Source of the DNA: Octopus bimaculoides
Taxonomy: Eukaryota
Assembly: GCF_001194135.2 (NCBI RefSeq)
Contig: NC_069001.1
Span: forward strand, 38,846,536 to 38,902,227
Length of the DNA stretch: 55,692 bases
Direction: 5' to 3'
Shown here: positions 3,154-55,102 of the stretch, in pieces
Layout of the letters: each line of letters begins with the position of its first letter
Numbering within the stretch: position 1 is the first letter of the stretch
The notes under the pieces: model-generated
What the model was told of the DNA's origin: nothing
Databases searched by the model: none
The model's input: the letters and a program-made list of their open reading frames with translations, nothing else
Position numbers and translations under genes: made by a program

Positions 3154-5180
3154 ATTGTCTTAAACCTGCCTCTCTAATCCTTCCAATGTTCTCTTTTACC
3201 GTTTCAGACCTAAAAAGTACCGAACTTTACCGAAATCTTTGTATAATCCATGTAAAGAAGGTGATCTAGCCAAAGTTATTTATATGTTAGGTAAGTGTAC
3301 TTGTGTGCCTTTGGGGGTTTGGCTGGTCAAGGGCTACGTGTGTGGGGGGTGAGGGTGATTGTAGTGATGGTGTGAGAGGGGGAGGGAGGGTGGATAAGAT
3401 TCAGTGTTTGGAGTAAAGTTATTGATTTTCTTTTATATCCCAATTGATGCACCCAGATTATCATAAAAGACGTTTGTCCAGGGTGCCATGCAGTGAGATC
3501 AAACCCACACCCTTTGTGCTTACAAAGCAAGGTGTTCTCCACTCGGCCATAACTGATGTGAATGAAATATTGTTTTATCATATTGCTTTGATGTTAAACG
3601 AGGATGTAATTGTTGTGGTTTTGTTTGTTTTGTGTAGTTGATGGAGCTGATCCCAACAAGAGAGATCCAGACAATGATGACCAGACAGCTGTCCATGCTG
3701 CAGCAATTAATGGTCATCTTGCTATCATACATGTGCTCATTCAAGTAAGAACATGTTTATTGTTGTTGTTGTTGTTGCTATTAAGGCAGCGAGCTGGCAG
3801 AATCGTTAGCACACCAGGCGAAATGCTTAGCAGTATTTTGTCTGCCGCTACGTTCTGAGTTCAAATTCCACCAAAGTCAACTTTGCCTTTCATCCTTTTG
3901 GGGTTGATAAATTAAGTACCAGTTATGCACTGGGGTTGATGTAACCAACTAACCCCCTCCTCCCAGATTTTGAGGCCTTGTGCCTTTAGTAGAAAGGATT
4001 ATTATTATTATTATATTTTAAGGTATCAAGCTGGCAGAATCATTAGCATGCCAGACAGATTAAATGTTTAACGACATTAGTTCAAATTCAACCAAGGTCA
4101 CCTNNNNNNNNNNNNNNNNNNNNNNNNNNNNNNNNNNNNNNNNNNNNNNNNNNNNNNNNNNNNNNNNNNNNNNNNNNNNNNNNNNNNNNNNNNNNNNNNN
4201 NNNNNNNNNNNNNNNNNNNNNNNNNNNNNNNNNNNNNNNNNNNNNNNNNNNNNNNNNNNNNNNNNNNNNNNNNNNNNNNNNNNNNNNNNNNNNNNNNNNN
4301 NNNNNNNNNNNNNNNNNNNNNNNNNNNNNNNNNNNNNNNNNNNNNNNNNNNNNNNNNNNNNNNNNNNNNNNNNNNNNNNNNNNNNNNNNNNNNNNNNNNN
4401 NNNNNNNNNNNNNNNNNNNNNNNNNNNNNNNNNNNNNNNNNNNNNNNNNNNNNNNNNNNNNNNNNNNNNNNNNNNNNNNNNNNNNNNNNNNNNNNNNNNN
4501 NNNNNNNNNNNNNNNNNNNNNNNNNNNNNNNNNNNNNNNNNNNNNNNNNNNNNNNNNNNNNNNNNNNNNNNNNNNNNNNNNNNNNNNNNNNNNNNNNNNN
4601 NNNNNNNNNNNNNNNNNNNNNNNNNNNNNNNNNNNNNNNNNNNNNNNNNNNNNNNNNNNNNNNNNNNNNNNNNNNNNNNNNNNNNNNNNNNNNNNNNNNN
4701 NNNNNNNNNNNNNNNNNNNNNNNNNNNNNNNNNNNNNNNNNNNNNNNNNNNNNNNNNNNNNNNNNNNNNNNNNNNNNNNNNNNNNNNNNNNNNNNNNNNN
4801 NNNNNNNNNNNNNNNNNNNNNNNNNNNNNNNNNNNNNNNNNNNNNNNNNNNNNNNNNNNNNNNNNNNNNNNNNNNNNNNNNNNNNNNNNNNNNNNNNNNN
4901 NNNNNNNNNNNNNNNNNNNNNNNNNNNNNNNNNNNNNNNNNNNNNNNNNNNNNNNNNNNNNNNNNNNNNNNNNNNNNNNNNNNNNTTTCTATTTACCCCA
5001 TCCATGTGTTTCCATCCCTGTAACTTAGCAGTACAAGGCTTACAAAGAATATGTCCTGGGGTCGATTTGTTCGACTAAAACCCTTCAAGGCAGTGCTCCA
5101 GCATGGCCACAGTCAAATGACTGAAACAAGTAAAAGAGTAAAAGAATATATATGCATATGTATATACATTTATATATGTT

Positions 5181-5237
<57 letters not shown>

Positions 5238-8011
5238 ATATGTATATACATAGACGCACACACACACACATACACTCCTATGTTTCTATATTGTTGTTCC
5301 ATTTGGTGTGTTTCTTGTTGCAGGGTGAAGATGGTATGACTTGTCTGCACATGGCTGCCAAAGGAGGCTACATTGATCTCATGGAGTTTCTCTTGTCTAC
5401 GCGGAAAGCCGACGTCAATGTCCAGGTAAGTGGACTCACTCTTGGAGTGACTGGATTCTCAACTATAATAAGGGACAGAGTGAGGGGGGTGAAAGAAGGA
5501 AGGGTGGGAGGGGAATAGTATCCCCTGATCATGGGGGAGGTATTAGTGTCCCTACAAGTGGAAGAAGAGGAAGAGGAGAGGAATGAGTGCCTCTACTTGT
5601 GTAGAAAGAGAAGGAGGAAGAGGAGTGTTAGTGGCCCCTGTTTCTTGCAAATGCTCCTTCCAGGCTGTTATGGTTGCAGTCCTAGATGTTGTGATGTTCA
5701 AGTTGTATCAACCCTTTTCCCTCATCTCTTTCACTCCCTAAATAAACCACTCAGACTCCCTAATCTGCTGAAATCCCTCAATGGTTTGAAAACAGGAGAC
5801 CCTTTCTAGAACTCAACCATATCAGTTGTTCCGGTGTATCTACTTACTGTCCCCTACAAACTGGTTTGGTTATCACTTGTGGGGTTGGGCTCAGAAGGTA
5901 AACAGGGAAGGGAATTTCATTTAGTACTTTTTGTGAAAATTAATTACATTATTTCACGTGATACGAGGGCAATTTGGCTCCTATTTCTAGCATTTCAAAC
6001 CCCTTTCTTTTACAGTAATGTTGACTTCTTGACCAAAATACAAGTTATGATTTTCAGCTGTAAACTTTCTGTCAAACCTCAACTTAATCAATCAATAATT
6101 AATTGTTTTTTCTTAATTAATTGTGTTTAAAGGATGATGGTGGTTGGACCCCAATTATTTGGGCAGCAGAGCACCGAAATGTTGAAAGTGCCAAGTTCCT
6201 TATTCAGCGTGGGGCTGATCCCACATTAAAGGATAATGTAAGTTTTTTAAAATGGCTTCTTTTGGGGGTTTTTGTGGGAATTGTTTAACTGTTTTCACAC
6301 TGTAGGAGGTCTTATCTACACCCTGTAGATAGATGCGTGTGTAGTATGTAACATAGAACTGTGTTATACACACTGGTAAATAAGTATGTATATAACAAAG
6401 AATAGTGTTATATACACTGGCAGGTGTGTATATATAACATTGTGCACACTGGTAGATGCATGTATGTAATATGAAATTAATTTATACAGATTAGTTGTGT
6501 GTATAAAAAAGAATTGTTATACACACTGGTAATTATGTGTGTATGACAAATCTATGTTGTACCCACTTGTAGATATGTATGTATAAAACGGATCTGTCAT
6601 ACACATTAGTGGAAGTGTGTATGTAACATATTGTTATATACTCTTGTGGATGTCTGTATATAACACAGAACTGTGATATACACATATATCATAAAACTGA
6701 TTTATACATGTATAGATGTTTGCACGTAGCATAGAACTGTTGTAGTTGTGTGTATATATACATTACAGTCTTTTATTATCAGCCTCTATGTATGTACACA
6801 GTTATTGACCCTCTGGGGGTCAGTACAGTTACAATAGAAGAATTTATTAAGAACACTTGTTTAGAAGATAGACAAAACAGTTACCATTACACCTTAATTG
6901 ATGATGATGATGATGATGATGATGACTGTTTTTTGTTTCCAGGAAGAGAACACGGGGCTACATTGGGCTGCGTTCTCAGGAAGTGTTGAGATTGCAGAAT
7001 TATTTTTGGATTACGGCTGTGAACTAGAATCTCCAAATGAACACGGAGATCGGCCCCTGTAAGTAGTATTTCCTAACCATCTTGTAGCCAGGTGGACACA
7101 ACCATCTGGCGTTTCTGTTACCTGTCCTCCCATTCCAATTAACCCCGTTCATCCTTCAACATACTCTCCTTTCCCAGTCCTTATTTCCTTTTTCCCAAAT
7201 TCTCTTGATTCTCACATATTACTACAATGGCAGTCTTGTGGAGGGTTTTACCCAATGCAATCGCTTCTGGCTTCTATTTTCAGATTCCATTCATCGAGTG
7301 AAGTCACAAGTCACTTTGATTACCAATTCTCTCTCTCAAGACTTTTCACTTTCTCTTTCTTCACTTCATCTTCCCTGTGATTTTCTTTGTTATCTCCCCT
7401 TGTACCAGTTTTTTTTCTTAATTCTCTTCGATTCCAATTGATGAACCACAATGTTTAGTGTTGTTGTTAGTTACAAGTTGTCTGAAGACCACTCACTGGG
7501 TCCTTGTATATCTGATGGAGTCAATGTAATCAACTTGCTTTGTGTCAAAATTATTATTATTATTATTATGTGTTTCCAGAGCGATGTTCCTGTTTTCACC
7601 TTAAACGTTTTCTTTATTCCTTGCAGACATATATCAGTTAGACAAGACAATTATGAATGTGTTGTGTAAGTAGAAACATTTTTCCTTCCTCTTTCTTAAT
7701 TATTCATCTTCCTCTGCTGCAATGTGTGGACCAACTTTAACTATGTGGGGGTCTTCTAGTGTGAGTGTCCTAAAGGGTGTCACTGGCAGAATGTGTACTT
7801 TGGTAAATAGGGGGCACACTGATGTGTGTATTGTTGCTGTGTGAAGCCCTCCATGATATGTTCTGAGCTGACAGACCCTAATTTGTAGTGTCTCTATGTT
7901 ATTGCAGGGTGGGAGCGACTTTTTTTTTAATTCCAAACTCTTAATTCTAGATAAAGAAATATGACACAAGAGAACCTGAAGAACTATCCTTTGGGTCAGG
8001 GTTATCATCAT

Positions 8012-17120: not shown

Positions 17121-20100
17121 CTGCAAGTGCTGAACACCCACATCCCACCAACTCTTATTCTCCAAAACATCCTGAAACATTTTCAAGAATTTCTGATGAC
17201 TTGACACTTATTAACATTTCAGAAATTCCATTTTAATGTAGAATATTTCCAATAACCAATAAAATTATTATAATTGACCCATAATTTAAAATGTAACCAA
17301 CTTTGGAGTAAGAATATGGTAGATACCATATCATCCACTTCAGGAACTTTGATGCCAATGTAGACTGTTGACTTTTCTCAGCAAATAGAAGTTGTCTGTG
17401 GCTCTCACAAGACAACCTTCTGTTATCATGTCTACACTCAGTTTAAATCCTACCAAAAATATATGTTCCTTAATTGGTGTATTAATTAGGGCTCATTAAA
17501 TTGACCCCACTTAGCCCTCATTTAAGAAATTCTGATGAAGACAACCAACTGATTGATCATGGTTTCATGTTGAAGTCACCTCCATGCACACACATGGGTT
17601 GTGTGGTAGGTGTGAGAGGCCTATCTGGTCAGTTTGACCAAAGTTTGAGAGAAAACGGCCTGCAGCAAGGGACTGGGGCTCTGAGCCCCTTCTCTCCCAT
17701 TGTCTTACATGTAATCCAGCTAAATCCCTCTGAAATCATACCCTGCTCTCCTTCACAAAGGAAAGGATATGTTATTAATGTAGTTGTAAATGGGACGGCC
17801 ATGACTGGGTTGTCTGATCAGAATGAAAAACTGACTCTCATGTCTGCATGTTTAATGGTTACCTGTTACAGTGTGTGTGTGTGTGTGGGGGGGGGGGCGC
17901 ATTAGTGTCATGTGCTACCCTCAGTATTTCTGAGCCAGTGTCAGATTGAAAAAATTACATGACCTACGCTGTGGACAACCCAAATGACCACCACCACTGA
18001 GTGTCCGTAAGAAGAGGACTGTTGAAATAGCAAACCACTACAAAGAATCATATTAATGAGTTATGTTGATGATGATGATGACCAGGGTGTCCCCTCCTCT
18101 CCATCAAGCCACCCCCACTACAAACTTTTGTTTTCAATTAAACATTTTCTTTTAATTACTTTGTTATCTCCTAAATTTTGTGTTCTGTTCTCATGATGGG
18201 AGGGGCAGGACACACAGACAGCTCTCCCCGCTTCATCTCTCTCTCTCTCTTTCCAACATTCAGTTCATTCTGTCGAAATCTGTCTTATTGGTCTCAGTCA
18301 ATGGGCCACGGCCATTCTGGGGCAGTTCAAAAGTCACTTGATTAAATTTCTTCCTTCCCTCTCCTGCACAAAAACGTTTTTTATCGACCAAAATGACTTC
18401 GGAAGAAAAGTGAAAAAAAAAAAAAATACAAAAAAAAAATAATAACTTTGAGCTGGGACTCGACAAAAGAGGAGGTTACTTGTTTGGCACATGACCTCTG
18501 AACTCTGACCTCTATTACACAAAATATAAACGATGAAATGAAAACAAGAAAAACTATTAAAAAAGTAAATAAAAGAAATCAAGCCAACCTCAAACGAAAT
18601 GCAAAAAAAAAAATATTTGAAAATCCCCCAAATTTCTTGTATTTAAAAGAAAAAAAAAAATTTCTCCCTTGAAACTCCAATGTACAAATTAAAAATTAAA
18701 CAAGAAATCNNNNNNNNNNNNNNNNNNNNNNNNNNNNNNNNNNNNNNNNNNNNNNNNNNNNNNNNNNNNNNNNNNNNNNNNNNNNNNNNNNNNNNNNNNN
18801 NNNNNNNNNNNNNNNNNNNNNNNNNNTCTGCAGACAACAAACAATTTCAATTTTCTTTGTTTCTCTTCCAGGGTTTTTTTTTTTTTCCTTCTCCAATAAA
18901 AACCTTTTTTTTCTCCAAAACAAACAACAAAAGCAAAAATTGTGTTTTGTTGTGTGTGTATTGTGAACGCTTTTGGCTGAATCGGTTGCGGGTATTTGGC
19001 TCATGATTGCAAGGTCCTGAGTTCAATTCCTGGTGGTCTGTTGTGTCCTTGAGCAAGACACTTTATTTTACGTTGCTCCAGTCCACTCAGTTACTAATGA
19101 AAGTGTGTTGTACCGGCATAGGTTGTCAAGCGATGTTGGGGGGGCAGACACAAACATACACACAACAAGCTTCTTTCAGTCCCGTCTACCAAATCCACTT
19201 ACAAGGCTATAGTAGAAGACACTTGCCCAGAGTGCCATGCAGTGGGACTGAACCTGGAACCATGTGATTGGTAAGCAAGCTTCTTACCACTCCTGTGCCT
19301 ATATATGCATATATATATATATATATAGTTATACACACATGATGGGTTTCTTTTAGTTTTGTCTACCAAATCCACTCACAAGGTTTTGGTTGGCCTTGGG
19401 CTATATAGTAGAAGACATACCCTGTGGTGGGACTGAACCTGAAACCATGTAGTTGTGAAGCAAACTTCTTACCCAACAGTCAGGCTTGTGGAGTTATTTA
19501 ATGAGGTGTTGTGTTGTGCTGAAAATATTTTGTCAGGCTTTTTGTGAATCATAATCCACAGATTTTCGAGGAACACAGCATGTGTCTGTGAGTCGGTTGA
19601 GCATCGGCTGAAGGTAAGTGTTCAAATGACTCATCACTGGTACAGAAAAAGAAGCTGACATAAACATCAGAGATTCTTTGCCTCGTTACAGAAACTGCTG
19701 GAGTTCTTCATGGACTAGGCAAGATCTTCTGACAGGGATTAAGGCCATTGCAATATTGGTAGCACTCTTCTGTTATAGAATATATTTGTGAAGATTTTCT
19801 AAATAATTTTCCTTCCATTAATGACTTTCAAATTTATTGATTTCATTATTCTAACGTATCTATAAAAAAACTTTTTGTTCTTTATTAACATTTTTACAGG
19901 AAAAAAATAAAAAGATATTTAAAATATGGAAGATTAAATTATCAAGATAAAGAAAAGACCCTCCTAACTACCTCACCAAGGAAAAAGTAGTGGAACTAAG
20001 CAGCAGGAGATGGTGGTGGGGAGTAACAGGTTAGACATCTCAGAAGAAATGGTGTGTTTAGCGATACCTTGTGGACACGATTGCAAAAGTGTTGCTGTGG

Positions 20101-25920: not shown

Positions 25921-26289
25921 CGTATATATATATATATATATATATNNNNNNNNNNNNNNNNNNNNNNNNNNNNNNNNNNNNNNNNNNNNNNNNNNNNNNN
26001 NNNNNNNNNNNNNNNNNNNNNNNNNNNNNNNNNNNNNNNNNNNNNNNNNNNNNNNNNNNNNNNATTCCACTGACTTCCTAAGATGCTGCAAAACCCTTTT
26101 GGAAGTCCGAAAACGGGGTCGGGGTGAGGTAGAAGCCTCGGAAATTGTACCCACTCCCAACATTTTACAGAAATAAATTTTCCAGACTAAATTACATGGT
26201 TCGTTATTAAATGAGAATGTGACATCTATATTGTGTATAATCTATATATATATATAATAGCGTGTATGAGTTATGTATGTATACATGTA

Positions 26290-26893: not shown

Positions 26894-27489
26894 GGTCTGA
26901 AAAATTACCTGTTTTNNNNNNNNNNNNNNNNNNNNNNNNNNNNNNNNNNNNNNNNNNNNNNNNNNNNNNNNNNNNNNNNNNNNNNNNNNNNNNNNNNNNN
27001 NNNNNNNNNNNNNNNNNNNNNNNNNNNNNNNNNNNNNNNNNNNNNNNNNNNNNNNNNNNNNNNNNNNNNNNNNNNNNNNNNNNNNNNNNNNNNNNNNNNN
27101 NNNNNNNNNNNNNNNNNNNNNNNNNNNNNNNNNNNNNNNNNNNNNNNNNNNNNNNNNNNNNNNNNNNNNNNCAAAACGGAGAAATTCCAACTTATGTGGT
27201 CTTCTTGACGAAACTCTTATTCCCACCCCCAGTCCGGAAAAATTTCCCCCACAAGTTTCTTTATAATCGTAATCTATGTCGTTTGAAAGGTATTTATATA
27301 AAATTTCATTGAAAGATATCCATTTTCCTAAAAGCTATGAAGGAAAAAAATCGGATCATGTGAATTTTCCGAAATTCCTCTCCCCCACCCTTGGTTAATT
27401 TGCGCAAATTTTGGTTTTCAGGTTCGTTTACTACACATTTTTTTGTTGTTTTGGTGGGCCGGGTATTAAACTAGATATTAACTGTTTTA

Positions 27490-28184: not shown

Positions 28185-29457
28185 CGTTGCTTTATTTCCT
28201 CATCTCGCATCATCATTATTATGAATCAATTCACTTCTTTATTTCCTGTCAGTTGTCTGGACAAAAGGTTTAAGGGTGAGTGATGCTCCCCATCCCCTCA
28301 GAAACCGGTTCAAACTATCGAGTAGGGATTCACAAGCTATTAGAAGTACGTTGTCTTGTGTTTTGTAACTAAGTGTTCCTTCTGGGTCCCAGTTACTGCA
28401 GCACCCCCAACGTGTCCTACATGAAGGTGATATCGAGGGCAGGGGCCTATGTGAATAGAAGACCAGAGACAGCTGAGAAAATTTAAAACAGAAGAATTCC
28501 ACGTAATATAATGGCAATATTTCGGTATTGGTAGACGTCATTCATTTCTTATTCAGCCTAACCTCTATCTACGTCACCGGGGGAAACTGGGAGTGAACGA
28601 CGTCGTCTACTAATACCGAAAGATCGCCGGAATTTTCTACAAATGCGCATAAGGTCGTGAAGATACCGATTATATCGAAATTTAATCTGAGTAAAAAACA
28701 ACACACATCACATTTTCTACAAAATGAAACTTGAAAATTCACCCACCCGCAACAAACAGAAATGTGTGTGCGTGCTCATCATTCGTCTTTTCAGAACAAA
28801 TTCCCTACATAACCAGAATCTACACACACTGAAGTGTATTTGTAGAAAATTTCATTCCAAGATATTAATTTTTCTGAAAGTTATCAGGAAACAAAATGTG
28901 ATGGGGGAAAACTTGTGTAGATCTGCTAAATTGCAGGTTATTCAATATTTTATGCAAACAAACGATCTGCCGCGTTCAGCCGGTTTACAAATAAATCATT
29001 TTATTTTAATGACTTAGATTAATTAAAGCGAGTTAATCACCGTTTTATGGTATATTACTTAATTAACACATCTTTGAATTTTTGTAGACCTTCAACAATT
29101 CCACGTGTGTAATCCATGTAAATAATGATTAACGAGACAACGAAAGAATCAAGGATTAATTAATTAAAACTAATTAAACTGACTTCGATACTGCTCTATT
29201 ATAAAACACCCTACATTTTCCTTGTACCAATCATAAGACTGCGGCCACGCTGGGGCACCGACTTGTAAAGTTAGTCGAACGCTTTTCACGTGCCACCACA
29301 GGAATGCTTTTATTCTATCGGTTTCTTTAGCCGAACTGCTATGTTATGAGGACAAACAAAAGCACATAAATACGACAGATACCCACACAGTTTCAGTTTA
29401 CCAAATGACGAGTTGGTCACGAGTGGAATGTCTTCAACAACACTAGTACAATGCCGT

Positions 29458-30903: not shown

Positions 30904-32613
30904 TTAAGGCGGCGCTCTATCAGGACATATTTCCGTCCAGGTAAGAAAAGTTTTGGAGTTGGCTAAAAACATAGCAGGAAGAAGGGCGTGGATATATAAA
31001 ACGGTATATTTTAATAGAAACACAACGAAAGAGGGTTGCTGGGGATGGTCAGGAGAAGGCAAAGTGTCCTGTTCAGTAGCGTTGGAGATACGGGAGTACC
31101 AGGTACTCAACCACTGGTCTTTGTATAGGGACTCGTAGAATAAACAGCTGATGGTAATTGAAACGCAAGTGGCAGAGACAACGGAGAAGAATCTGAACTT
31201 TCGCAACAAATCCCTTATTCGTCCATTGGTTTTTGAGATTCGAATCAGTGATATAAAAGCAGTGAGTCGAAATATAAGGCTGACGAGAAAATATAGAGTA
31301 TGCGGTAGTAGCAAGGATGCGATGAGGACGGTTGTGTTAAACAGACCCGTTTGACAAACGCCACTGAGGACATCTCCGCCGATATAACCATAGTTTAATA
31401 AAATAGACGTCTGCAGAATGGGGAGGCCCCATGATATGGAATGGTAATACAGATATTTCGCTTCGATTGCTTCCGAGCACCATTTCTTCGTAGCAGCTAG
31501 GAACCATACCAAACCAAAGATTACAGACCAAACGGAAGCAGCCATACTGAAGAAATAAACTAGAATAAAACTGAGGGTACAGATTCCGTTTTTTGTTCCT
31601 TGTCTGACTAAAGACACAAGTTGACATGTTTGATTGGGACACGATAGAGGGGCCATATCAATACATGCCACCGTGTCCCTGTAGAAGAAGGCAGCTAAAT
31701 AGTAGTTGAGTGAAACGAGCGAATAGCAAAAGGATTGGAATAAAACAACCCGTTGTGGGTATTGGAAACGTTGAATATTAATAAGGAATGTGACAGTGAC
31801 GAAGAAGCAGGGTATGAGGGCGAAAGACGAGAGAATACCGTTAAAAAGTCGAGCAAATTGTACCTGGGATTCTGTGAAAAACATGCCGATGCAGGGAGCC
31901 CCACAGTCCGGGATGATGAAGGATCCAATGATTAATTTATAATTTAGTTTGTCTGGTGTTCTGAGTTCCGGAGGGCAAAGTAATTGATGCTGGTGTTGTT
32001 TAGTATTGTTGTTGTTGTCGTTGGTGGTGGTGGTTGTGTCTTGTGACGAAGTTGTCTGTGGAAATGTTCTTTTCTCAGCTTCAGAAAAATGTGAAGAATG
32101 AGTTGTCAATCGATCAGTTCCCATTTTTGGACCGGTACACAGTCCCGAAGTGGGGAATCTCTTACAGCTTAAAAATTCCGGCCATTTGAAACCGAAAGAA
32201 TTCATCGTGTCTTCGCAGTCTTCTTGGACACGTTCACAGACTTTTCGACAAGGGGGCAAGACAAGGCTGTATTCCTCATTACAGGCAGGTGTATAAAGAA
32301 GACAAAGGAAGAACCGACCGTAGGGAGAACACTGCGACTCGATCAGCAGCAAGAATCCGTGCAGCCCGACCCTGGCTGCCTGTTGGTTCTGATCATTAAG
32401 GGGATTCGGAAACCCGGTCTGATTGTAGGGCAGGTCTTGACACAGACTAATGGCAATTGGTTCGCATTGAATGAGGTTCGCTCTTAACCAATGTCTTCGG
32501 AATGAAGTAATTGAAGGAGAAGAAACTACATGTTTACAGAGAATCATCAGAGAAACGAGGAATGAATAGTTAACCAACGTTTGATATGGCATTAAACACC
32601 GCGACATCGGCAT
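30904..32613 (-). CDS. FZD: Divergent Frizzled receptor (class F GPCR), single coding exon, 569 aa from ATG 32613; closest in motifs to FZD1/2/7 or FZD5/8, subfamily unresolved
   Basis: Uninterrupted ORF. Hydrophobic signal-like N-terminus; CRD with all 10 Cys (CEPI, CQD, QCSP, FFLC, YTPAC, PPCR, VCE, DCE, LSC, LCTG) and an NQT glycosylation site; linker CPPEL..DCGAPC; TM motifs TFLIN..RFQYPQR, YFFSMAASVW, WFLAA..KW..EAIE, GDVLSGVC, CLFYE, FLLKY; KTFLTW (KTxxxW). The ORF-track start at 32661 is a GTG; in-frame ATGs are at 32613, 32607 and 32592. Confidence 0.95.
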   Translation of the reverse strand: MPMSRCLMPYQTLVNYSFLVSLMILCKHVVSSPSITSFRRHWLRANLIQCEPIAISLCQDLPYNQTGFPNPLNDQNQQAARVGLHGFLLLIESQCSPYGRFFLCLLYTPACNEEYSLVLPPCRKVCERVQEDCEDTMNSFGFKWPEFLSCKRFPTSGLCTGPKMGTDRLTTHSSHFSEAEKRTFPQTTSSQDTTTTTNDNNNNTKQHQHQLLCPPELRTPDKLNYKLIIGSFIIPDCGAPCIGMFFTESQVQFARLFNGILSSFALIPCFFVTVTFLINIQRFQYPQRVVLFQSFCYSLVSLNYYLAAFFYRDTVACIDMAPLSCPNQTCQLVSLVRQGTKNGICTLSFILVYFFSMAASVWSVIFGLVWFLAATKKWCSEAIEAKYLYYHSISWGLPILQTSILLNYGYIGGDVLSGVCQTGLFNTTVLIASLLLPHTLYFLVSLIFRLTAFISLIRISKTNGRIRDLLRKFRFFSVVSATCVSITISCLFYESLYKDQWLSTWYSRISNATEQDTLPSPDHPQQPSFVVFLLKYTVLYIHALLPAMFLANSKTFLTWTEICPDRAPP

Positions 32614-33105: not shown

Positions 33106-34466
33106 TACGCGTAAAACAAATAAATATAACATGGACAAGGATCGTTACATTTACTACACGAACATACTTTTATCTTATTGATTTATACATCTATCTATCT
33201 ATCTATCTACCTCTCTCTCTCTCTCTCTCTATCTGTTTTTGCTCTCTCTATCCTCTTTAAAACCCCTTTTCTCTTTCTCTTTGGCAAGCCTTCTCGCTTT
33301 GCTACCACCTGTTCACACACACACACACACACNNNNNNNNNNNNNNNNNNNNNNNNNNNNNNNNNNNNNNNNNNNNNNNNNNNNNNNNNNNNNNNNNNNN
33401 NNNNNNNNNNNNNNNNNNNNNNNNNNNNNNNNNNNNNNNNNNNNNNNNNNNNNNNNNNNNNNNNNNNNNNNNNNNNNNNNNNNNNNNNNNNNNNNNNNNN
33501 NNNNNNNNNNNNNNNNNNNNNNNNNNNNNNNNNNNNNNNNNNNNNNNNNNNNNNNNNNNNNNNNNNNNNNNNNNNNNNNNNNNNNNNNNNNNNNNNNNNN
33601 NNNNNNNNNNNNNNNNNNNNNNNNNNNNNNNNNNNNNNNNNNNNNNNNNNNNNNNNNNNNNNNNNNNNNNNNNNNNNNNNNNNNNNNNNNNNNNNNNNNN
33701 NNNNNNNNNNNNNNNNNNNNNNNNNNNNNNNNNNNNNNNNNNNNNNNNNNNNNNNNNNNNNNNNNNNNNNNNNNNNNNNNNNNNNNNNNNNNNNNNNNNN
33801 NNNNNNNNNNNNNNNNNNNNNNNNNNNNNNNNNNNNNNNNNNNNNNNNNNNNNNNNNNNNNNNNNNNNNNNNNNNNNNNNNNNNNNNNNNNNNNNNNNNN
33901 NNNNNNNNNNNNNNNNNNNNNNNNNNNNNNNNNNNNNNNNNNNNNNNNNNNNNNNNNNNNNNNNNNNNNNNNNNNNNNNNNNNNNNNNNNNNNNNNNNNN
34001 NNNNNNNNNNNNNNNNNNNNNNNNNNNNNNNNNNNNNNNNNNNNNNNNNNNNNNNNNNNNNNNNNNNNNNNNNNNNNNNNNNNNNNNNNNNNNNNNNNNN
34101 NNNNNNNNNNNNNNNNNNNNNNNNNNNNNNNNNNNNNNNNNNNNNNNNNNNNNNNNNNNNNNNNNNTATATATATATATATATATATCAATAGTTATCGC
34201 CAAGCCAACATGGCAGTCCAGGAAAATAGGACGAATGCTGCCGTTGGTTAGCTCCAAGAGGCCTTCACCTCTAGCTCGCTATGTGACCACACGAACCTGT
34301 GTCCATTATAACCTTCGAACGGAGGAGGTCTGTATACACACGCAGAGAGAGAGAAAGGAAGAGAGAGGGTAGGTGGTAAAGTTGATAAGCGTAGGGTTGA
34401 GGCAATTTACATTTGAGTACAAAATACAGATTATAAAATAAAGAAAGAATATATAACGAAAGGCAT

Positions 34467-41761: not shown

Positions 41762-43543
41762 CTATATATAAAACCAATCCTTCCCGGTTCCTGCAACATC
41801 TGAAGACCGACATCGCGTTAATGCTACGTGTTTTGAACAATTTAAACGTGGTAGCTTTCATTCCTCTCCAGGTCTTAACAACAGATTTGTTCCAAAGAAG
41901 AAAGGACACGAACCGAAACCAGTTCTGCAACTTCATTTATTGACCCCGAAAGGATGAAAAATAAAGTTGGCCACGGCGGGGTTTGATCTCTGAGTGTAGA
42001 GACGGGATACAAATACTGCGAAGCACTGTCTGTCTGTCTGTCACTCTAATGTCTCGTGCATTTATGAGTGCAGTGGCATAAATGCATTCAACTGATGCAC
42101 TCAATGGAAACTGCGAGAGAACTGCAGCTGTTTCACCTGATTTCACACGGCACAGCATCTCAAATTACGTTACGGCGAACATTGGACAGTGCAATCTTAT
42201 GTATGTATGTATGTATGTATGTATGCATGCATGTTGGCATGCATGTATCTATGTATGTATCTATCTATCTATCTATCTATCTCACCATACCATATTAAAC
42301 CATAGTCCCTCCTCTCTCAACTTTAATGTGATTCTATGAAAAACAAAAACAAACCCAGTGATGCGACTCGGATCACATCTCCATCCCACTTTGCTGAATG
42401 GCCACCTCCATGTGTACGCTTCGTTTCCTTTAGGTTCCCTTTTGAAATTGCTTACAAATCTTAATTGAACCTTTAATCCGACATTGCGTTATCGCCGGTT
42501 TCTTTGGTAACTTGCCAACCACTTAACGCACTAATGTTTAACTAAGCAGCCAGAGAAACCATCTTGCTTTCAAGTTTAAAACCGGAATTAAAGCGCTCCC
42601 CCACCCCCCACCTTAACTGTATGAATATATTATAAATGAACTCTCTCACATTCGCTCATTTATAGAAGCNNNNNNNNNNNNNNNNNNNNNNNNNNNNNNN
42701 NNNNNNNNNNNNNNNNNNNNNNNNNNNNNNNNNNNNNNNNNNNNNNNNNNNNNNNNNNNNNNNNNNNNNNNNNNNNNNNNNNNNNNNNNNNNNNNNNNNN
42801 NNNNNNNNNNNNNNNNNNNNNNNNNNNNNNNNNNNNNNNNNNNNNNNNNNNNNNNNNNNNNNNNNNNNNNNNNNNNNNNNNNNNNNNNNNNNNNNNNNNN
42901 NNNNNNNNNNNNNNNNNNNNNNNNNNNNNNNNNNNNNNNNNNNNNNNNNNNNNNNNNNNNNNNNNNNNNNNNNNNNNNNNNNNNNNNNNNNNNNNNNNNN
43001 NNNNNNNNNNNNNNNNNNNNNNNNNNNNNNNNNNNNNNNNNNNNNNNNNNNNNNNNNNNNNNNNNNNNNNNNNNTGTTTCCATACACACACACATTATGC
43101 GCAATATGCTGTTCACTGGAAAAACTGCAATAAATTTAAATATTATACTCCGTCCTTGTAGGATAAAGAAGAATGTAAAACCCTTACTTTCTGTGCTGTT
43201 GATTTGTAGATGGAAGCGGAGAAAGAGTTTCCTCACGGACCGTTAACAGTTTAAAAAATAAAACAAAACTATGTAATCTGTGTGCATTTTCCTTCTTTTA
43301 TTTTACACACACACGCACGCAGACATTTTTTGCAACTGTCCGACGATCAATCACTTGAAACACTGATCAAGAGCTTGTGAAGATTTTGTTTCGCCCTCTA
43401 ATAGTATGTTACTCTAACTTTGATATTAGAGTACTATTTTTTCCATCTTGTCACGCATTTTATGTACTTACTTATGTATCTTTATATGTATGCATGTATG
43501 TATGTATACACACACAACCTCACTATACATATATATATGTGTG

Positions 43544-50073: not shown

Positions 50074-53000
50074 CTTTTAACGGCTGTAGATGTAAACAAG
50101 GTTTAGTTGAACACCTTAAATAAACCTGTTGACCTTTCCTATAATGGCTTGGGAGGGGGAGGAGAGGAGTGTGATGGGGGAGAGGCAGAAGACGAAGGAG
50201 GAGGAGGAGAAGGAAAAGAGCTCTCGGTCGTCAGCTGTGATTGGATAGATGTAAGTTTGACGCCGTTCCAGCCATGGCCATCCAATTTTATGAAAGACTA
50301 TTGGGATTTGTCGTAGATTTAGCTGCTAATTCTAGCAAATCAAGCGACCGCAATAAATGCTTCCTTGTTGACTGCCTGTCTGTCTGCCTGCCTGACTGTC
50401 TTTGGGTCGACCTATGTGTCTATATGTTTGTGTGTGTCTGTGTGTCACTGTTTATCAACAGAGTATCTTTTGATAGAAATACATGTTGGCCTTGTTGTTG
50501 TTGTTGTTGTTCTCTCGTTGATTCTTTCACCTTTCTATAGTTTAATCAAATGACCAACACCATCCCCACCACTAAACCACCACCACCACCATCATCATCA
50601 TCGTCATCATCGCTATCGTTCTAACAAAACCCGGACGGCGACGACGACCATCACCGCCACCACCGCCGCCGCTACCACCGCCATCACCACTATCACCGCC
50701 ACCCTCACAACCACTACAACCATCATCGCTATCATCACTACACCGTCGCCGTTGCAACCACCTCCACCGCCACCATCAAACATGTGTAACCNNNNNNNNN
50801 NNNNNNNNNNNNNNNNNNNNNNNNNNNNNNNNNNNNNNNNNNNNNNNNNNNNNNNNNNNNNNNNNNNNNNNNNNNNNNNNNNNNNNNNNNNNNNNNNNNN
50901 NNNNNNNNNNNNNNNNNNNNNNNNNNNNNNNNNNNNNNNNNNNNNNNNNNNNNNNNNNNNNNNNNNNNNNNNNNNNNNNNNNNNNNNNNNNNNNNNNNNN
51001 NNNNNNNNNNNNNNNNNNNNNNNNNNNNNNNNNNNNNNNNNNNNNNNNNNNNNNNNNNNNNNNNNNNNNNNNNNNNNNNNNNNNNNNNNNNNNNNNNNNN
51101 NNNNNNNNNNNNNNNNNNNNNNNNNNNNNNNNNNNNNNNNNNNNNNNNNNNNNNNNNNNNNNNNNNNNNNNNNNNNNNNNNNNNNNNNNNNNNNNNNNNN
51201 NNNNNNNNNNNNNNNNNNNNNNNNNNNNNNNNNNNNNNNNNNNNNNNNNNNNNNNNNNNNNNNNNNNNNNNNNNNNNNNNNNNNNNNNNNNNNNNNNNNN
51301 NNNNNNNNNNNNNNNNNNNNNNNNNNNNNNNNNNNNNNNNNNNNNNNNNNNNNNNNNNNNNNNNNNNNNNNNNNNNNNNNNNNNNNNNNNNNNNNNNNNN
51401 NNNNNNNNNNNNNNNNNNNNNNNNNNNNNNNNNNNNNNNNNNNNNNNNNNNNNNNNNNNNNNNNNNNNNNNNNNNNNNNNNNNNNNNNNNNNNNNNNNNN
51501 NNNNNNNNNNNNNNNNNNNNNNNNNNNNNNNNNNNNNNNNNNNNNNNNNNNNNNNNNNNNNNNNNNNNNNNNNNNNNNNNNNNNNNNNNNNNNNNNNNNN
51601 NNNNNNNNNNNNNNNNNNNNNNNNNNNNNNNNNNNNNNNNNNNNNNNNNNNNNNNNNNNNNNNNNNNNNNNNNNNNNNNNNNNNNNNNNNNNNNNNNNNN
51701 NNNNNNNNNNNNNNNNNNNNNNNNNNNNNNNNNNNNNNNNNNNNNNNNNNNNNNNNNNNNNNNNNNNNNNNNNNNNNNNNNNTCTGTCTCCCGAGAAGCT
51801 ACACACACTTCACCAACTTCTTGTACCTATCAATAGCAAAAATGACCTATCTTATTGTTGCCACCAGAGGTGCTCCCTGTTAAGGAATTTGAAGCTGACA
51901 ATCCAGACATGCCGCTCTAGGCCTGACTGTCTCACACACAGGGACAAGGCATTTAATTCCTGCCACCCGTATAGGCTACAGCCACACCCATGTTGATCAT
52001 TAAACCTCAATTGCAACCCAACAGCACGAAATTTGGTTATTCCCACATAAAGATCACTGTCGTTAGTGTGTTAACACTCTTCTGAAAGACGACCGAAGTA
52101 CTTACTGACCAGCGCCATGTATGGCGCTCCAATACAAGGAACTGGCGTAGTTGTTGAATCCGCTGCATCGTAACCTCTCGCTAAAGCGACGACAGCATCC
52201 TGTCAACTTTCTGTCTGAACACGCAGACCTAAAAATAAGTAGCTGGTGTCGCTTTCCCAGCATTAATACCACGTAATCTGAGCTGACCAATAGAAGCCTA
52301 ATATTAAAAAACCATTTTGAATTTGTCTCAAATCTCTCCATTCTGTCCTAGCATTTGACGAGATGGACTCGTCCATGCTCCCACGAAATTTTAAGTTATG
52401 TGGAGTTGAGTTAAGCTGTTATTGATTATATATATATATATACGTGTATGTATGAGCAACGAAAGATGCCTCTACATGGTAGCTCGAGTAGAGAGAAGTA
52501 ACAGCCAAATTTCCCTTAAATCACACCCTCCGGCCGTGGGAAACAAATAACTCATTAGACAATGCACTCCTCGGTACACTGAGGCAAGGAAGGAAACAGG
52601 TTGACTTTAATCCTATGGATCTACTAGTACAGAACTAGCATAGTGCCAAACGAGAAGAACAACAGCAACAAACTGACCAGCGAGGAGTGGGTGCAGTGAT
52701 GCTGTGGGTGATGTCCCCTCTTTCGTTGTCAACCTAATCCTAGTCTTTTATGAAAAAAAAAACACTAGAAAAAAAAAACAAAAAAACCAGGAACGAATAT
52801 AAGCGAAGACGAATATGAAAAAAACAAATATAAATATCAAAACGTAAAAAAAAAACCTACAAAAAAAAACAACGCGAAATTATTAACAATTGATATCATT
52901 GTAAAGATTGTGTTTCTGTGGAATTGGTTGATGTTGATGTTGTTGTTGCTGTCGTTGTATGCTGTTGTTGTTGTTGTTGTTTTGTAGTTGTTGCTGATGT

Positions 53001-54213: not shown

Positions 54214-55102
54214 NNNNNNNNNNNNNNNNNNNNNNNNNNNNNNNNNNNNNNNNNNNNNNNNNNNNNNNNNNNNNNNNNNNNNNNNNNNNNNNNNNNNNNN
54301 NNNNNNNNNNNNNNNNNNNNNNNNNNNNNNNNNNNNNNNNNNNNNNNNNNNNNNNNNNNNNNNNNNNNNNNNNNNNNNNNNNNNNNNNNNNNNNNNNNNN
54401 NNNNNNNNNNNNNNNNNNNNNNNNNNNNNNNNNNNNNNNNNNNNNNNNNNNNNNNNNNNNNNNNNNNNNNNNNNNNNNNNNNNNNNNNNNNNNNNNNNNN
54501 NNNNNNNNNNNNNNNNNNNNNNNNNNNNNNNNNNNNNNNNNNNNNNNNNNNNNNNNNNNNNNNNNNNNNNNNNNNNNNNNNNNNNNNNNNNNNNNNNNNN
54601 NNNNNNNNNNNNNNNNNNNNNNNNNNNNNNNNNNNNTATACATATATGCATATACCGACTCCCAAACCCGTAGCCTCCGCACGTACTGTATTAAAATGTC
54701 GACCGTAATGGTGGTTTCTTTTGTCACGTCATAATTGAAGACATGAAAAATTAACGGATTTATTTATTTATTTGTTTATTAATCAATTAATTAATTTATC
54801 AAAATTTTATATGTTTTAGCGCAAAAACAAAAAGGAAAACCTGTTTCGTTCTTCTTGGTTGTCTTGTTTAGCACGAACACCCCCTCCATCAGGATTGATA
54901 CTGTTGTAGTCGTTGTCATTCTCCTTCTTTCTCTCTTCTGTTTGTTTGTTGTTGTTGTTGTTCTTCTTCTCCATCATCATAATCCACATCATCATCATCA
55001 TCTTCACAGAACTATCTCCGCAACCCGAACGCATTATTTACTGATACTATCATCATCTTTAGCATCATCATCATCATCATCATCACTATTATCATCATCA
55101 TC

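What the first reader, a model, noticed from the sequence alone, without database searches (positions are those of the whole stretch)
30904..32613. Intact but highly derived Frizzled that has lost several class-F activation microswitches together
Seen: a 1.7-kb ORF with no stop or frameshift in a region where every transposon is decayed, retaining the 10-Cys CRD, YP in ICL1/TM2, WFLAA, GDVLSGVC and KTxxxW. Aligned by eye to FZD7-type motifs: TM3 SIWWVIL reads SVWSVIF (W3.43>S); TM6 RIGVFSVLYTVP reads KFRFFSVVSATC (R6.32>K, G6.34>R, Y6.40>S, P6.43>C); TM7 GFWIWSGKT reads AMFLANSKT (W7.55>F). TM5 carries an Arg (IFRLT) and TM2 a Gln (FQSFCY). Established: the W3.43-Y6.40-F6.36 aromatic network, the P6.43 kink and the R/K6.32-W7.55 lock are described activation switches of Frizzleds. 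Inference: paired loss of the two interacting residues W3.43 and Y6.40 plus the TM6 proline suggests a lineage-specific paralogue with rewired signalling (biased, constitutive or decoy), possibly a cephalopod-specific Wnt receptor variant.
Basis: partly seen in the sequence, partly recalled or inferred. Interest (0 to 1): 0.75.

Follow-up and report, generated by a model that had tools for sequence, protein, structure and literature searches.

The report
Fast-evolving derived Frizzled gene in Octopus
This is a real, intact, single-exon extra copy of the Wnt receptor Frizzled, kept open in at least three Octopus species; it has replaced almost all residues that normally switch such receptors on and changes about 50 times faster than the normal copy, so it is probably a weakly constrained, signalling-impaired (decoy-like) receptor, not a finely rewired one.

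Summary
Window 30904-32613 (-) is a 569-codon ORF with a 10-Cys Fz CRD and a Frizzled 7TM domain. Proper alignments confirm W3.43S, Y6.40S, P6.43C, W7.55F and R6.32K. They add W7.57A, C1.43A, M7.44V, V7.48H, loss of both ECL3 cysteines, a 7-residue shorter ICL3 and no C-terminal ETxV. These positions are near-invariant in 119 FZD1/2/7 homologues, and Ser3.43 is unique among 61 diverse class F representatives.

New result: intact syntenic orthologues exist in O. vulgaris and O. sinensis, and they share the four core losses. They lack the window's TM5 Arg and R6.34, and have lost the Trp of KTxxxW.

Window versus O. vulgaris gives dN/dS of 0.50 (NG86) to 0.72 (ML, not significantly below 1). The canonical octopus Fz1/2/7 gives 0.012 at similar dS. 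It is still not a pseudogene:
- all three indels are in frame, where about 20 frameshifts are expected;
- no stops, P about 0.002;
- replacements avoid retained family-conserved sites, p = 0.002.

Best reading: an Octopus-restricted, fast-evolving Fz1/2/7-like paralogue with relaxed transduction machinery, most plausibly a Wnt-binding attenuator. Expression and function are untested.

The parts
30904..32613 (-). Complete single-exon coding sequence of the derived Frizzled: 569 codons plus the TAA stop at 30904-30906.
   Evidence: ORF list and translation. Pfam Fz plus Frizzled domains. A database protein is identical over the full length (P0001). Intact syntenic orthologues at L001:10001-11719 and L002:10001-11719.
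32518..32613 (-). N-terminal hydrophobic leader, aa 1-32. Likely signal peptide (inferred).
   Evidence: AF2 predicts a helix at 11-30 with low pLDDT ahead of the CRD. Only 2 of the first 49 residues differ from O. vulgaris.
32137..32466 (-). Cysteine-rich Wnt-binding domain (CRD), aa 50-159. All 10 cysteines and the YNxT glycosylation site are present.
   Evidence: PF01392 E 1.5e-30. The Cys columns are invariant in alignment A1. pLDDT is about 95. Its omega (0.34 NG86, 0.54 ML) is below that of the linker and the 7TM.
31882..32136 (-). Linker, aa 160-244. It holds a low-complexity Thr/Asn/Gln stretch and the conserved hinge cysteines C213, C237 and C241.
   Evidence: Translation. pLDDT is below 50 for residues 165-204. 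The hinge cysteines are invariant in A1.
30925..31881 (-). Seven-transmembrane core plus helix 8, aa 245-563.
   Evidence: PF01534 E 6.6e-74. The AF2 model has 7 TM helices plus H8 with pLDDT mostly above 90. Foldseek's best match is inactive FZD7 9epo (TM 0.91, rmsd 2.3 A).
31525..31527 (-). Codon of Ser363 at position 3.43, which is Trp in canonical FZDs.
   Evidence: W in 119/119 FZD1/2/7 homologues, and W or F in 61/61 diverse class F representatives. The same Ser occurs in O. vulgaris and O. sinensis.
31165..31200 (-). TM6 segment KFRFFSVVSATC, aa 472-483: K6.32, R6.34, F6.36, S6.40, C6.43.
   Evidence: S6.40 and C6.43 are shared with O. vulgaris and O. sinensis, while R6.34 is G there. 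TM6 residues 472-495 are 92% identical between species.
30937..30969 (-). End of TM7 and helix 8, FLANSKTFLTW, aa 549-559: F7.55, A7.57 and the KTxxxW motif.
   Evidence: In O. vulgaris and O. sinensis the motif reads KTLLPC, by a TGG>TGT change.
31471..31482 (-). ICL2 WCSE, aa 378-381. It keeps the Trp (ICL2) and Glu (4.36) that contact the DVL DEP domain in FZD4.
   Evidence: Residues W335(ICL2) and E338(4.36) of FZD4 are defined in PMC11369211. Both are invariant in A1 and kept here.
31030..31101 (-). ECL3, aa 505-528. It lacks both cysteines that are conserved in Fz1/2/7.
   Evidence: C515S and the absence of the partner Cys. The O. vulgaris orthologue also has none and carries a 5-codon insertion here.

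Best explanation
The locus is a genuine protein-coding gene. It is an intronless, lineage-restricted extra Frizzled paralogue, most similar to Fz1/2/7, and it sits alongside an ultra-conserved canonical Fz1/2/7.

**Shown.**
- The ORF is intact and syntenic in the window species (probably O. bimaculoides; inferred), O. vulgaris and O. sinensis.
- The class F activation network (W3.43, Y6.40, P6.43, W7.55), the ECL3 disulfide and the C-terminal PDZ ligand were lost before these species split.
- The protein now evolves about 50 times faster than the canonical copy (omega 0.5-0.7 against 0.012).
- Reading frame, stop-freeness and the retained family-conserved core are still under selection.

**Inferred mechanism.**
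- It is made as a CRD-bearing seven-pass membrane protein with the class F fold.
- It can probably still present a ligand-binding CRD, and possibly dock Dishevelled, because most DEP-interface residues are kept.
- It transduces poorly or not at all through the normal TM6/TM7 switch.
- It would therefore act as a membrane-tethered Wnt attenuator or decoy, or as a low-stringency accessory receptor, much as Drosophila Fz3 and insect Fz4 are thought to do.

My confidence is about 0.85 that it is a maintained, derived Octopus paralogue, and about 0.35-0.4 for the decoy mechanism.
For: **Identity and fold.**

**Switch losses.** They are confirmed and rare.

**Orthologues.**
- P0144 is O. vulgaris CAI9738078.1 and P0272 is O. 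sinensis XP_036367657.1.
- The full ORFs are intact.
- The flanks are collinear over about 12 kb of the window, 38991-27172.

**Selection for an open frame.**
- There are 3 indels of 3, 3 and 15 nt, all in frame.
- Non-repeat flanks carry 13.7 indels per kb, 84% of them frameshifting. About 20 frameshifts are therefore expected, P(0) about 3e-9.
- Neutral simulation of the 153 substitutions gives 5-6 stops, P(none) 0.002-0.003.

**Site-selective constraint.**
- Identity to the family consensus is 76% at invariant columns and falls to 11% at variable ones.
- Between species, retained conserved sites change at 6.7% against 18.3% elsewhere (p = 0.0017).

**Relaxed rate.**
- NG86 omega 0.50, with dS 0.157 and dN 0.079.
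- ML omega 0.72, with dS 0.123.
- The canonical copy has omega 0.012 at dS 0.144.

**Domain pattern fitting a ligand-binding, transduction-relaxed protein.**
- CRD omega is 0.34-0.54 and 7TM omega is 0.57-0.83.
- Helix 8 plus tail is 53% identical, and the KTxxxW Trp is lost in O. vulgaris and O. sinensis.

**DEP-contact residues.** W(ICL2), E4.36, L5.69, I5.72 and L6.29 are kept.

**An extra copy, not a replacement.** The O. bimaculoides proteome has 6 class F members against 5 in Lottia (PMC6408891 supplement).

**Precedent for decoy Frizzleds.** PMC10560568.
Against: - There are no expression data of any kind. No Logan-derived (public sequencing-run assembly) protein of this gene turned up, whereas the canonical copy sits on more than 100 such contigs.
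- ML omega is not significantly below 1 (p about 0.075). dN (0.08-0.09) is about equal to the substitution divergence of alignable flanks (K80 0.086). Most of the protein may therefore be free to drift.
- The CRD-versus-7TM difference in omega is not statistically established.
- The CRD lipid-groove helix is itself remodelled (HQFxPLVK becomes HGFLLLIE), so Wnt binding is not assured.
- TM6, which carries S6.40 and C6.43, is among the best conserved segments between species (92%). This hints that the derived core may matter, which fits an active rewired receptor better than a pure decoy.
- Subfamily origin is unresolved by tree.
Confidence: 0.55

Rival explanations
1. It is an actively signalling, rewired receptor. 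The loss of the TM6/TM7 lock and the aromatic network gives a constitutive or biased Frizzled (for example G-protein-leaning or DVL-independent). The high omega then reflects adaptive change, not relaxation.
For: - Mutating the R/K6.32-W7.55 switch stabilises an active, mini-G-binding state and abrogates functional DVL interaction in FZD4, 5, 6 and 7 (PMC6368630 abstract).
- The TM6 segment with S6.40 and C6.43 is 92% identical between species, and the four core substitutions are fixed in all three species.
- ICL1 and ICL2 are 100% and 91% identical.
Against: - 7TM omega is 0.57-0.83, not distinguishable from 1.
- Helix 8 and the tail drift freely and KTxxxW is broken in one lineage.
- Radical single-species changes occur in TM5 and TM6: L to R at 449 and G to R at 6.34.
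- P6.43F alone has only paralogue-dependent, mostly loss-type effects (PMC8225760).
- Positive selection cannot be tested with two lineages.
Confidence: 0.15
2. It is a functionless relic on its way to pseudogenisation: a gene that lost its role and is drifting, with the ORF still open by luck or only recently released from constraint.
For: - ML omega is 0.72 and not significantly below 1.
- dN is about equal to flank divergence.
- 4 of the 5 O. vulgaris versus O. sinensis differences are non-synonymous.
- Key motifs are eroding lineage by lineage.
- No transcript-derived copies were found in the protein collection.
- Annotators produced three different, partly truncated gene models.
Against: - No frameshift occurred where about 20 are expected, P about 3e-9.
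- No stop occurred, P about 0.002.
- The start codon and the TAA stop are the same in all three species.
- Replacements avoid retained conserved sites, p = 0.0017.
- The copy is about 61% diverged from any parent yet still open. At the simulated rate of 5-6 stops per 153 substitutions, my extrapolation is that neutral drift over that distance would have produced tens of stops.
Confidence: 0.17
3. It is not an extra paralogue. It is the extremely divergent Octopus orthologue of another ancestral Frizzled subfamily, such as Fz4 or Fz9/10. Its apparent affinity to Fz1/2/7 arises only because that subfamily is the slowest-evolving.
For: - K6.32 and the absence of ECL3 cysteines are FZD4-like features: K6.32 occurs in FZD4 and FZD9 (PMC8225760), and the Fz4 signature is '0C' in ECL3 (PMC4669655).
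- The NJ tree does not place it inside the Fz1/2/7 clade.
- The diagnostic-site test is uninformative.
Against: - FZD4 is the weakest FZD match in both CRD and 7TM: 212 bits against 333 for FZD7.
- The smallest distance is to the cephalopod canonical Fz1/2/7, P0002.
- Its NJ neighbour P0196 itself matches FZD7, FZD1 and FZD3 best.
- The O. bimaculoides class F count is 6, one above the usual 4 Fz plus Smo.
Confidence: 0.08

Closest known systems
Canonical Fz1/2/7 (human FZD7, FZD1, FZD2; cephalopod FZD1_7, e.g. O. bimaculoides XP_014787906.1 and Sepia pharaonis CAE1239454.1)
   Same: - Best sequence and structure matches: FZD7 E 2e-98, Foldseek TM 0.91.
- The same architecture: signal peptide, 10-Cys CRD, hinge cysteines, 7TM, helix 8.
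- Single-exon gene, like the Sepia canonical copy.
- WFLAA, GDVLSGVC, F6.36 and Y2.51 are kept.
   Different: - Only 37-39% identity.
- It lacks W3.43, Y6.40, P6.43, W7.55, W7.57, the ECL3 disulfide and the ETxV tail, and its ICL3 is 7 residues shorter.
- Omega is 0.5-0.7 against 0.012.
Decoy or attenuator Frizzleds of insects (Drosophila Fz3; dipteran and lepidopteran Fz4)
   Same: Full-length CRD-plus-7TM Frizzleds with degraded intracellular signalling motifs, proposed to bind Wnt without relaying it. Insect Fz4 lost KTxxxW (PMC10560568), as the O. vulgaris and O. sinensis orthologues here have.
   Different: - Those are ancient orthology groups (Fz9/10- and Fz4-type) shared across arthropods. 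This gene is a young-distribution, Octopus-only copy of Fz1/2/7 type.
- A decoy function is shown genetically for the insect genes and is only inferred here.
- The window species still has KTFLTW.
Smoothened (SMO)
   Same: Class F 7TM with non-FZD residues at the same three core positions: F3.43, A6.40 and F6.43, and no TM6 proline. In SMO this shortens the aromatic network and leaves room for the deep sterol pocket (PMC8225760). The octopus protein also lacks P6.43 and has small residues at 3.43 and 6.40.
   Different: - Sequence similarity to SMO is far lower, 69 bits against 333.
- The CRD, linker and ICL2 are FZD-type.
- The residues are S, S and C, not F, A and F.
- No evidence of sterol binding.
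Other multi-switch-loss Frizzleds (e.g. Tetranychus urticae 'frizzled-like' XP_015786657.1, and unnamed Logan proteins P0227, P0177, P0231)
   Same: Rare Frizzleds that changed 3-4 of the six switch positions. This shows that the network can be lost in fast-evolving lineages.
   Different: They keep an aromatic residue (F) at 3.43. They are not closer to the octopus gene than canonical FZDs are. None shares the S/S/C/F combination.

Membership tests
Frizzled (class F GPCR, FZD type) | N-terminal Fz cysteine-rich domain with 10 conserved cysteines | tested here: met
   PF01392 E 1.5e-30 at aa 50-156. C50, C58, C95, C104, C111, C122, C126, C133, C150 and C159 fall in invariant columns of A1.
Frizzled (class F GPCR, FZD type) | Frizzled/Smoothened seven-transmembrane domain and class F fold | tested here: met
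   PF01534 E 6.6e-74, profile positions 1-319 of 322. AF2 pLDDT 83.8 with 7 TM helices plus H8. Foldseek matches FZD7 at TM 0.91-0.92. The model was built from an alignment of canonical FZDs, which biases it towards that fold.
Frizzled (class F GPCR, FZD type) | KTxxxW motif in helix 8 (Dishevelled recruitment) | tested here: inconclusive
   Present in the window as KTFLTW. The orthologues of O. vulgaris and O. sinensis read KTLLPC.
Frizzled (class F GPCR, FZD type) | R/K6.32-W7.55 molecular switch | tested here: not met
   K6.32 is present, but position 7.55 is Phe and 7.57 is Ala. W7.55 is found in 117/117 homologues and 57/61 diverse representatives.
Frizzled (class F GPCR, FZD type) | Extended aromatic switch W3.43-Y6.40 (with F6.36) and the Y2.51-Y6.40 hydrogen bond | tested here: not met
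   S3.43 and S6.40. F6.36 and Y2.51 are kept. The switch is defined in PMC8225760 and PMC11358414.
Frizzled (class F GPCR, FZD type) | [quoted passage not shown] | tested here: not met
   C483 at 6.43 in all three species. The quotation is from PMC8648716.
Frizzled (class F GPCR, FZD type) | DVL DEP-domain interface: W(ICL2), E4.36, L5.69, I5.72, L5.76, L(ICL3), L6.29 | tested here: inconclusive
   W378, E381, L456, I459 and L469 are kept. L(ICL3) is Ile here and Thr in O. vulgaris. Position 5.76 falls in the shortened ICL3. Binding itself was not tested.
Frizzled (class F GPCR, FZD type) | Binds Wnt through the CRD lipid groove | not testable with these tools
   M137, F140 and F142 are kept, but the groove helix is altered from HQFxPLVK to HGFLLLIE. 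The assignment of groove residues is from my memory of the Fz8-Wnt8 structure and was not checked here.
Fz1/2/7 orthology group | Groups with Fz1/2/7 in phylogeny | tested here: inconclusive
   All best hits are Fz1/2/7, and the nearest distance is to cephalopod Fz1/2/7. NJ places the long branch outside the clade, next to P0196. It shares 1 of 6 Fz1/2/7 and 3 of 8 Fz3/6 diagnostic sites.
Fz1/2/7 orthology group | Two ECL3 cysteines and a C-terminal ES/TxV motif (signatures cited in PMC4669655) | tested here: not met
   ECL3 has no Cys. The protein ends ...TEICPDRAPP.
Processed or decaying pseudogene | Frameshifts, stops, neutral substitution pattern, no orthologous conservation of the ORF | tested here: not met
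   The ORF is intact in three species with only in-frame indels. P(no frameshift) is about 3e-9 and P(no stop) about 0.002. Replacements are site-selective. Omega is nevertheless high, 0.5-0.72.
Smoothened | SMO-type sequence with F3.43, A6.40 and F6.43 and the sterol sites | tested here: not met
   SMO scores 69 bits against 333 for FZD7. The residues here are S, S and C.
Secreted Frizzled-related proteins or FzCRD decoys | CRD without a 7TM (with or without an NTR domain) | tested here: not met
   The single ORF encodes a full 7TM. The truncated 176-aa O. vulgaris gene model is an annotation that splices out of the ORF.

The most novel reading that the evidence does not exclude
Replacing W3.43, Y6.40 and P6.43 with Ser, Ser and Cys, and the TM7 tryptophans with Phe and Ala, has hollowed out the base of the 7TM core and straightened TM6. 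That would make an Octopus-specific Frizzled with a Smoothened-like deep pocket, gated by a small lipid or sterol, or constitutively open, instead of by the Wnt-driven TM6/TM7 switch. It would be a natural intermediate between the FZD and SMO modes of class F activation. The comparatively high conservation of the derived TM6 between species would then reflect this new function.
Probability: 0.07. Interest if true: 0.8.

Novelty: new variant of a known kind. Interest (0 to 1): 0.5.

Why it matters
Frizzleds are described as the most conserved GPCR family (PMC6408891), and W3.43, Y6.40, P6.43 and W7.55 are treated as class-wide activation switches. Here nature has replaced all four at once, in a protein whose reading frame has been kept open across at least two Octopus lineages. 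The canonical copy next to it is virtually frozen (2 replacements in 546 codons).

- For class F pharmacology, this is a ready-made multi-mutant. It can test what the fold does without its switches: DVL docking, G-protein coupling, pocket formation.
- For evo-devo, it would add a lineage-specific modulator to the octopus Wnt toolkit, which published surveys reported as unexpanded.
- If it proves untranscribed, it becomes instead an example of how long a large ORF can persist under very weak constraint.

It also exposes three inconsistent public gene models, which should be corrected to the full 569-572-aa ORF.

Tried and rejected
1. **Word-index homologue searches.** I ran them with the whole protein, the 7TM and the N-terminus.
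   - They found no orthologue except P0144.
   - The O. sinensis protein is hidden inside P0144's cluster, so these searches under-report.
   - The exhaustive search was what revealed the orthologue.
2. **Rare-shared-residue test for affinity to octopus Fz1/2/7**. Not discriminating: 7 shared rare residues against 10-15 for random divergent sequences.
3. **NJ tree on 317 7TM columns**. It gives a long-branch placement next to P0196. I judged it unreliable. No ML tree software was available.
4. **Subfamily diagnostic columns**. There are too few to decide.
5. **The idea that its NJ neighbour P0196 is an Fz4, which would have pointed to an Fz4 origin.** Rejected, because P0196 matches FZD7, FZD1 and FZD3 best.
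6. **First HMM of the 7TM**. It failed because BRIL-fusion insertions became match states. I rebuilt it on FZD7 columns.
7. **Compensated frameshift as the cause of the divergent helix 8 and tail.** Rejected: the nucleotide alignment shows only clustered substitutions, TGG>TGT.
8. **Retrogene signature.** There is no poly(A) tail downstream. The canonical cephalopod gene is itself single-exon, so intronlessness says nothing about retroposition.
9. **A downstream exon restoring an ETxV tail.** I saw no convincing donor by eye, and the same TAA stop is conserved in three species.
10. **Literature search by accession** and for cephalopod Frizzled work. No paper describes this gene.
11. **Second copy in the window.** None.
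Full report
**1. What is in the sequence**

Window 30904-32613 on the minus strand is an ATG-to-TAA reading frame of 569 codons. Stop to stop it runs 610 codons. The next longest N-free frame in the 55.7-kb window is 192 codons. The window is about 38% GC, rich in microsatellites and broken by eight N gaps.

- Pfam finds an Fz cysteine-rich domain (aa 50-156, E 1.5e-30) and the Frizzled/Smoothened membrane region (aa 245-563, E 6.6e-74, profile 1-319 of 322).
- phmmer against PDB sequences aligns the protein end to end with FZD7 and FZD1 (E about 1e-98). Scores then fall in the order FZD3, FZD6, FZD5, FZD4 and, far lower, SMO.
- An AlphaFold2 model built on 56 homologues has mean pLDDT 83.8. 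It shows a CRD, seven TM helices and helix 8.
- Its best structural matches are FZD7 structures (9epo and 8yy8, TM-score 0.91-0.92). The model leans on an alignment of canonical FZDs.

**2. The claimed substitutions**

I anchored the generic numbering on published FZD7 residues: W354(3.43), R470(6.32), F474(6.36), Y478(6.40), P481(6.43) and W547(7.55) (PMC11358414, PMC8648716).

| Position | Canonical | This protein | Frequency of canonical residue in 119 Fz1/2/7-type proteins |
|---|---|---|---|
| 3.43 | W | S363 | 119/119 |
| 6.32 | R or K | K472 | not a loss |
| 6.36 | F | F476 (kept) | kept |
| 6.40 | Y | S480 | 117/118 |
| 6.43 | P | C483 | 116/118 |
| 7.55 | W | F549 | 117/117 |
| 7.57 | W | A551 | near-invariant |

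The HMMER pairwise alignment and a MAFFT alignment with the 119 Fz1/2/7-type proteins (molluscs, arthropods, chordates) agree on these residues.

- K6.32 is normal for FZD4 and FZD9, so it is not a loss.
- The protein differs at 47 columns that are at least 98% conserved. These include C1.43A, M7.44V and V7.48H, which belong to the 'solid base' layer named in PMC11358414. They also include the loss of both ECL3 cysteines, a 7-residue shorter ICL3, and a short tail with no ES/TxV.

**3. Is the combination ordinary elsewhere?**

An exhaustive HMMER search of 1.84 billion cluster representatives gave 61 diverse class F proteins with near-complete 7TM domains.

- In them, 3.43 is W (57) or F (4), never a small residue.
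- Y6.40 is kept in 53, P6.43 in 53 and W7.55 in 57.
- Only four representatives change three or four of the six switch positions. One is a spider-mite 'frizzled-like' protein. None has the S/S/C/F set.

So multi-switch loss happens, but it is rare, and this is the most extreme case in the sample.

**4. Orthologues**

This is the main new result.

- The exhaustive search returned P0144, a 176-aa protein that is 89% identical to residues 1-151.
- P0144 is O. vulgaris CAI9738078.1, annotated 'frizzled-5-like'. Its 90% cluster also holds O. sinensis XP_036367657.1, 'frizzled-1-like', 484 aa.
- The genomic loci are L001 (GCA_951406725.2 OX597834.1) and L002 (GCA_006345805.1 CM016879.1).
- Each holds an uninterrupted 572-codon frame co-linear with the window ORF, with the same start and the same TAA stop.
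- The flanks are collinear over about 12 kb of the window (38991-27172).
- Both public models are truncated because they splice out of the ORF at an internal GT at codon 150.
- The orthologues share S3.43, S6.40, C6.43, F7.55, the Cys-free ECL3 and Gln in TM2.
KTFLTW is KTLLPC.

No closer relative than 39% identity was found from any other animal. The collection does hold Argonauta hians and Sepia pharaonis Frizzleds. Unannotated genomes could not be searched.

**5. Mode of evolution**

Window versus O. vulgaris shows 153 nucleotide differences, 90.3% nucleotide identity and 82.9% amino-acid identity.

| Comparison | Method | omega | dS | dN |
|---|---|---|---|---|
| Derived gene, window vs O. 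vulgaris | NG86 | 0.50 | 0.157 | 0.079 |
| Derived gene, window vs O. vulgaris | ML (GY94, F3x4, kappa 4) | 0.72 | 0.123 | 0.089 |
| Canonical Fz1/2/7, O. bimaculoides vs O. sinensis | ML | 0.012 | 0.144 | 0.0017 |

- The ML value is not significantly below 1 (2dlnL 3.18).
- By domain, omega (NG86 / ML) is 0.34 / 0.54 for the CRD, 0.56 / 0.77 for the linker and 0.57 / 0.83 for the 7TM.
- The canonical copy has 2 replacements in 546 codons.
- The similar dS, the synteny and the source pattern of the window protein suggest the window is O. bimaculoides. This is inferred, not shown.
- Substitution divergence of alignable flanks (K80 0.086) is about equal to dN. Most residues therefore drift nearly freely.

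Three results reject a dead gene.

- **Indels.** Protein-guided alignment shows three indels of 3, 3 and 15 nt. Non-repetitive flanks carry 13.7 indels per kb, 84% of them not multiples of three. That predicts about 20 frameshifts in the ORF, P(0) about 3e-9.
- **Stops.** Neutral simulation of 153 substitutions yields 5-6 stop codons, P(none) 0.002-0.003.
- **Non-random replacement.** Identity to the family consensus falls from 76% at invariant columns to 49%, 42%, 21% and 11% in progressively less conserved bins. Between the two octopus species, sites that still carry the family-conserved residue changed at 6.7% against 18.3% elsewhere (Fisher p = 0.0017).

By segment, ICL1, ICL2, TM6 and ECL3 are the best conserved. 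TM1, TM2 and especially helix 8 plus tail (53%) are the worst.

**6. Origin**

- The canonical cephalopod Fz1/2/7 is itself a single exon (Sepia L004, 1716 nt). Intronlessness is therefore inherited and says nothing about retroposition.
- By distance, the nearest protein is the cephalopod canonical copy.
- NJ places the long branch outside the Fz1/2/7 clade, and diagnostic sites are too few to decide.
- A published count gives O. bimaculoides six class F proteins against five in Lottia and 'no cephalopod expanded groups' (PMC6408891 supplement). That fits one unremarked extra copy.
- The 7TM distance to the parent (about 1.1) is about nine times the per-lineage distance since the species split (0.12). 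The duplication is therefore much older than that split, or it was followed by a burst of change. This is inference.

**7. Mechanism**

Shown: an intact CRD-plus-7TM protein whose switch layer is replaced and whose helix 8 and tail are unconstrained.

Inferred:
- Canonical transduction is impaired.
- The CRD, which has a lower omega than the linker and 7TM, is the part that matters most.
- Most DEP-contact residues defined on FZD4 are retained: W(ICL2), E4.36, L5.69, I5.72 and L6.29 (PMC11369211).
- A membrane-tethered attenuator or decoy is the most economical reading. It would resemble Drosophila Fz3 and the KTxxxW-less insect Fz4 (PMC10560568).

Points against this reading:
- The lipid-groove helix of the CRD is itself altered.
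- TM6 is well conserved.
- There are no expression data.

The rivals are an active rewired receptor, a drifting relic and a divergent orthologue of another subfamily. They are scored in the report sections.

A speculative but testable alternative comes from SMO. SMO has F3.43, A6.40 and F6.43, and this shortened network makes room for its deep sterol pocket (PMC8225760). The octopus S/S/C layer could open a comparable cavity.

**8. Verdict**

- The gene is real, Octopus-restricted as far as could be seen, and already present in databases under inconsistent names and truncated models. I found no paper that describes it.
- It is a new variant of a known kind. Interest is moderate and hinges on expression data.

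Noticed in passing
window 32164-32166 (Cys150 codon; donor AGCT|GTAAGA); L002:10001-11719; L001:15708-15785; window 28373-28444 (-): The O. sinensis RefSeq model (484 aa) and the O. vulgaris model (176 aa) both splice out of the ORF at the same internal GT donor, which is conserved in all three species. The O. sinensis acceptor (TGCAG|) reads GGG in the window, so it is not conserved. The terminal exon of the O. vulgaris model has an 83% identical counterpart 2.5 kb downstream of the window ORF. These could be annotation artefacts, or real CRD-only and linker-less isoforms.
   Followed up: partly
window 32467-32613 (-), aa 1-49: The N-terminal leader differs from O. vulgaris at only 2 of 49 residues (NG86 omega 0.21). 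That is far better conserved than the 7TM and unusual for a signal-peptide region. It may reflect overlapping regulatory or translational constraint.
   Followed up: no
window 31337-31642 (-); L001 10966-11271 (+): A 101-codon GTG-initiated ORF in another frame inside the Frizzled ORF is open in both the window and O. vulgaris. This is probably chance, given 90% nucleotide identity.
   Followed up: no
window 5024-5515 (+), ankyrin match at about 5330-5425: An exon-like ORF encodes one ankyrin repeat (Pfam Ank E 1.5e-7), next to a (TA/CA)n-rich stretch and an N gap. It is presumably an exon of a neighbouring multi-exon gene. None of the eight other long ORFs tested had a Pfam match.
   Followed up: partly
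window N runs 4104-4985, 18710-18826, 25946-26063, 26916-27171, 33333-34166, 42670-43074, 50792-51782, 54214-54636: Eight assembly gaps; the ones I read directly (33333-34166, and as seen in ORF translations those at 42670, 50792 and 54214) abut (CA)n, (GA)n or (TA)n microsatellites. The gap at 33333-34166 lies only about 720 bp upstream of the Frizzled ATG, so the promoter region is incomplete in this assembly.
   Followed up: no
L003 (O. bimaculoides GCA_001194135.2 CM046627.1), canonical Fz1/2/7: The canonical O. bimaculoides Fz1/2/7 gene has an N gap inside its linker even in the chromosome-level assembly. This explains the truncated public models (UniProt A0A0L8FPZ8, 517 aa; XP_014787906.1, 543 aa). 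Outside the gap it differs from O. sinensis at only 2 of 546 residues.
   Followed up: partly
P0121-P0136 (exhaustive search): The highest-scoring library proteins are not receptors. They are very long proteins, up to 6305 aa, matched in up to 15 separate stretches, apparently arrays of tandem Fz CRDs. Their source organisms are unknown.
   Followed up: no
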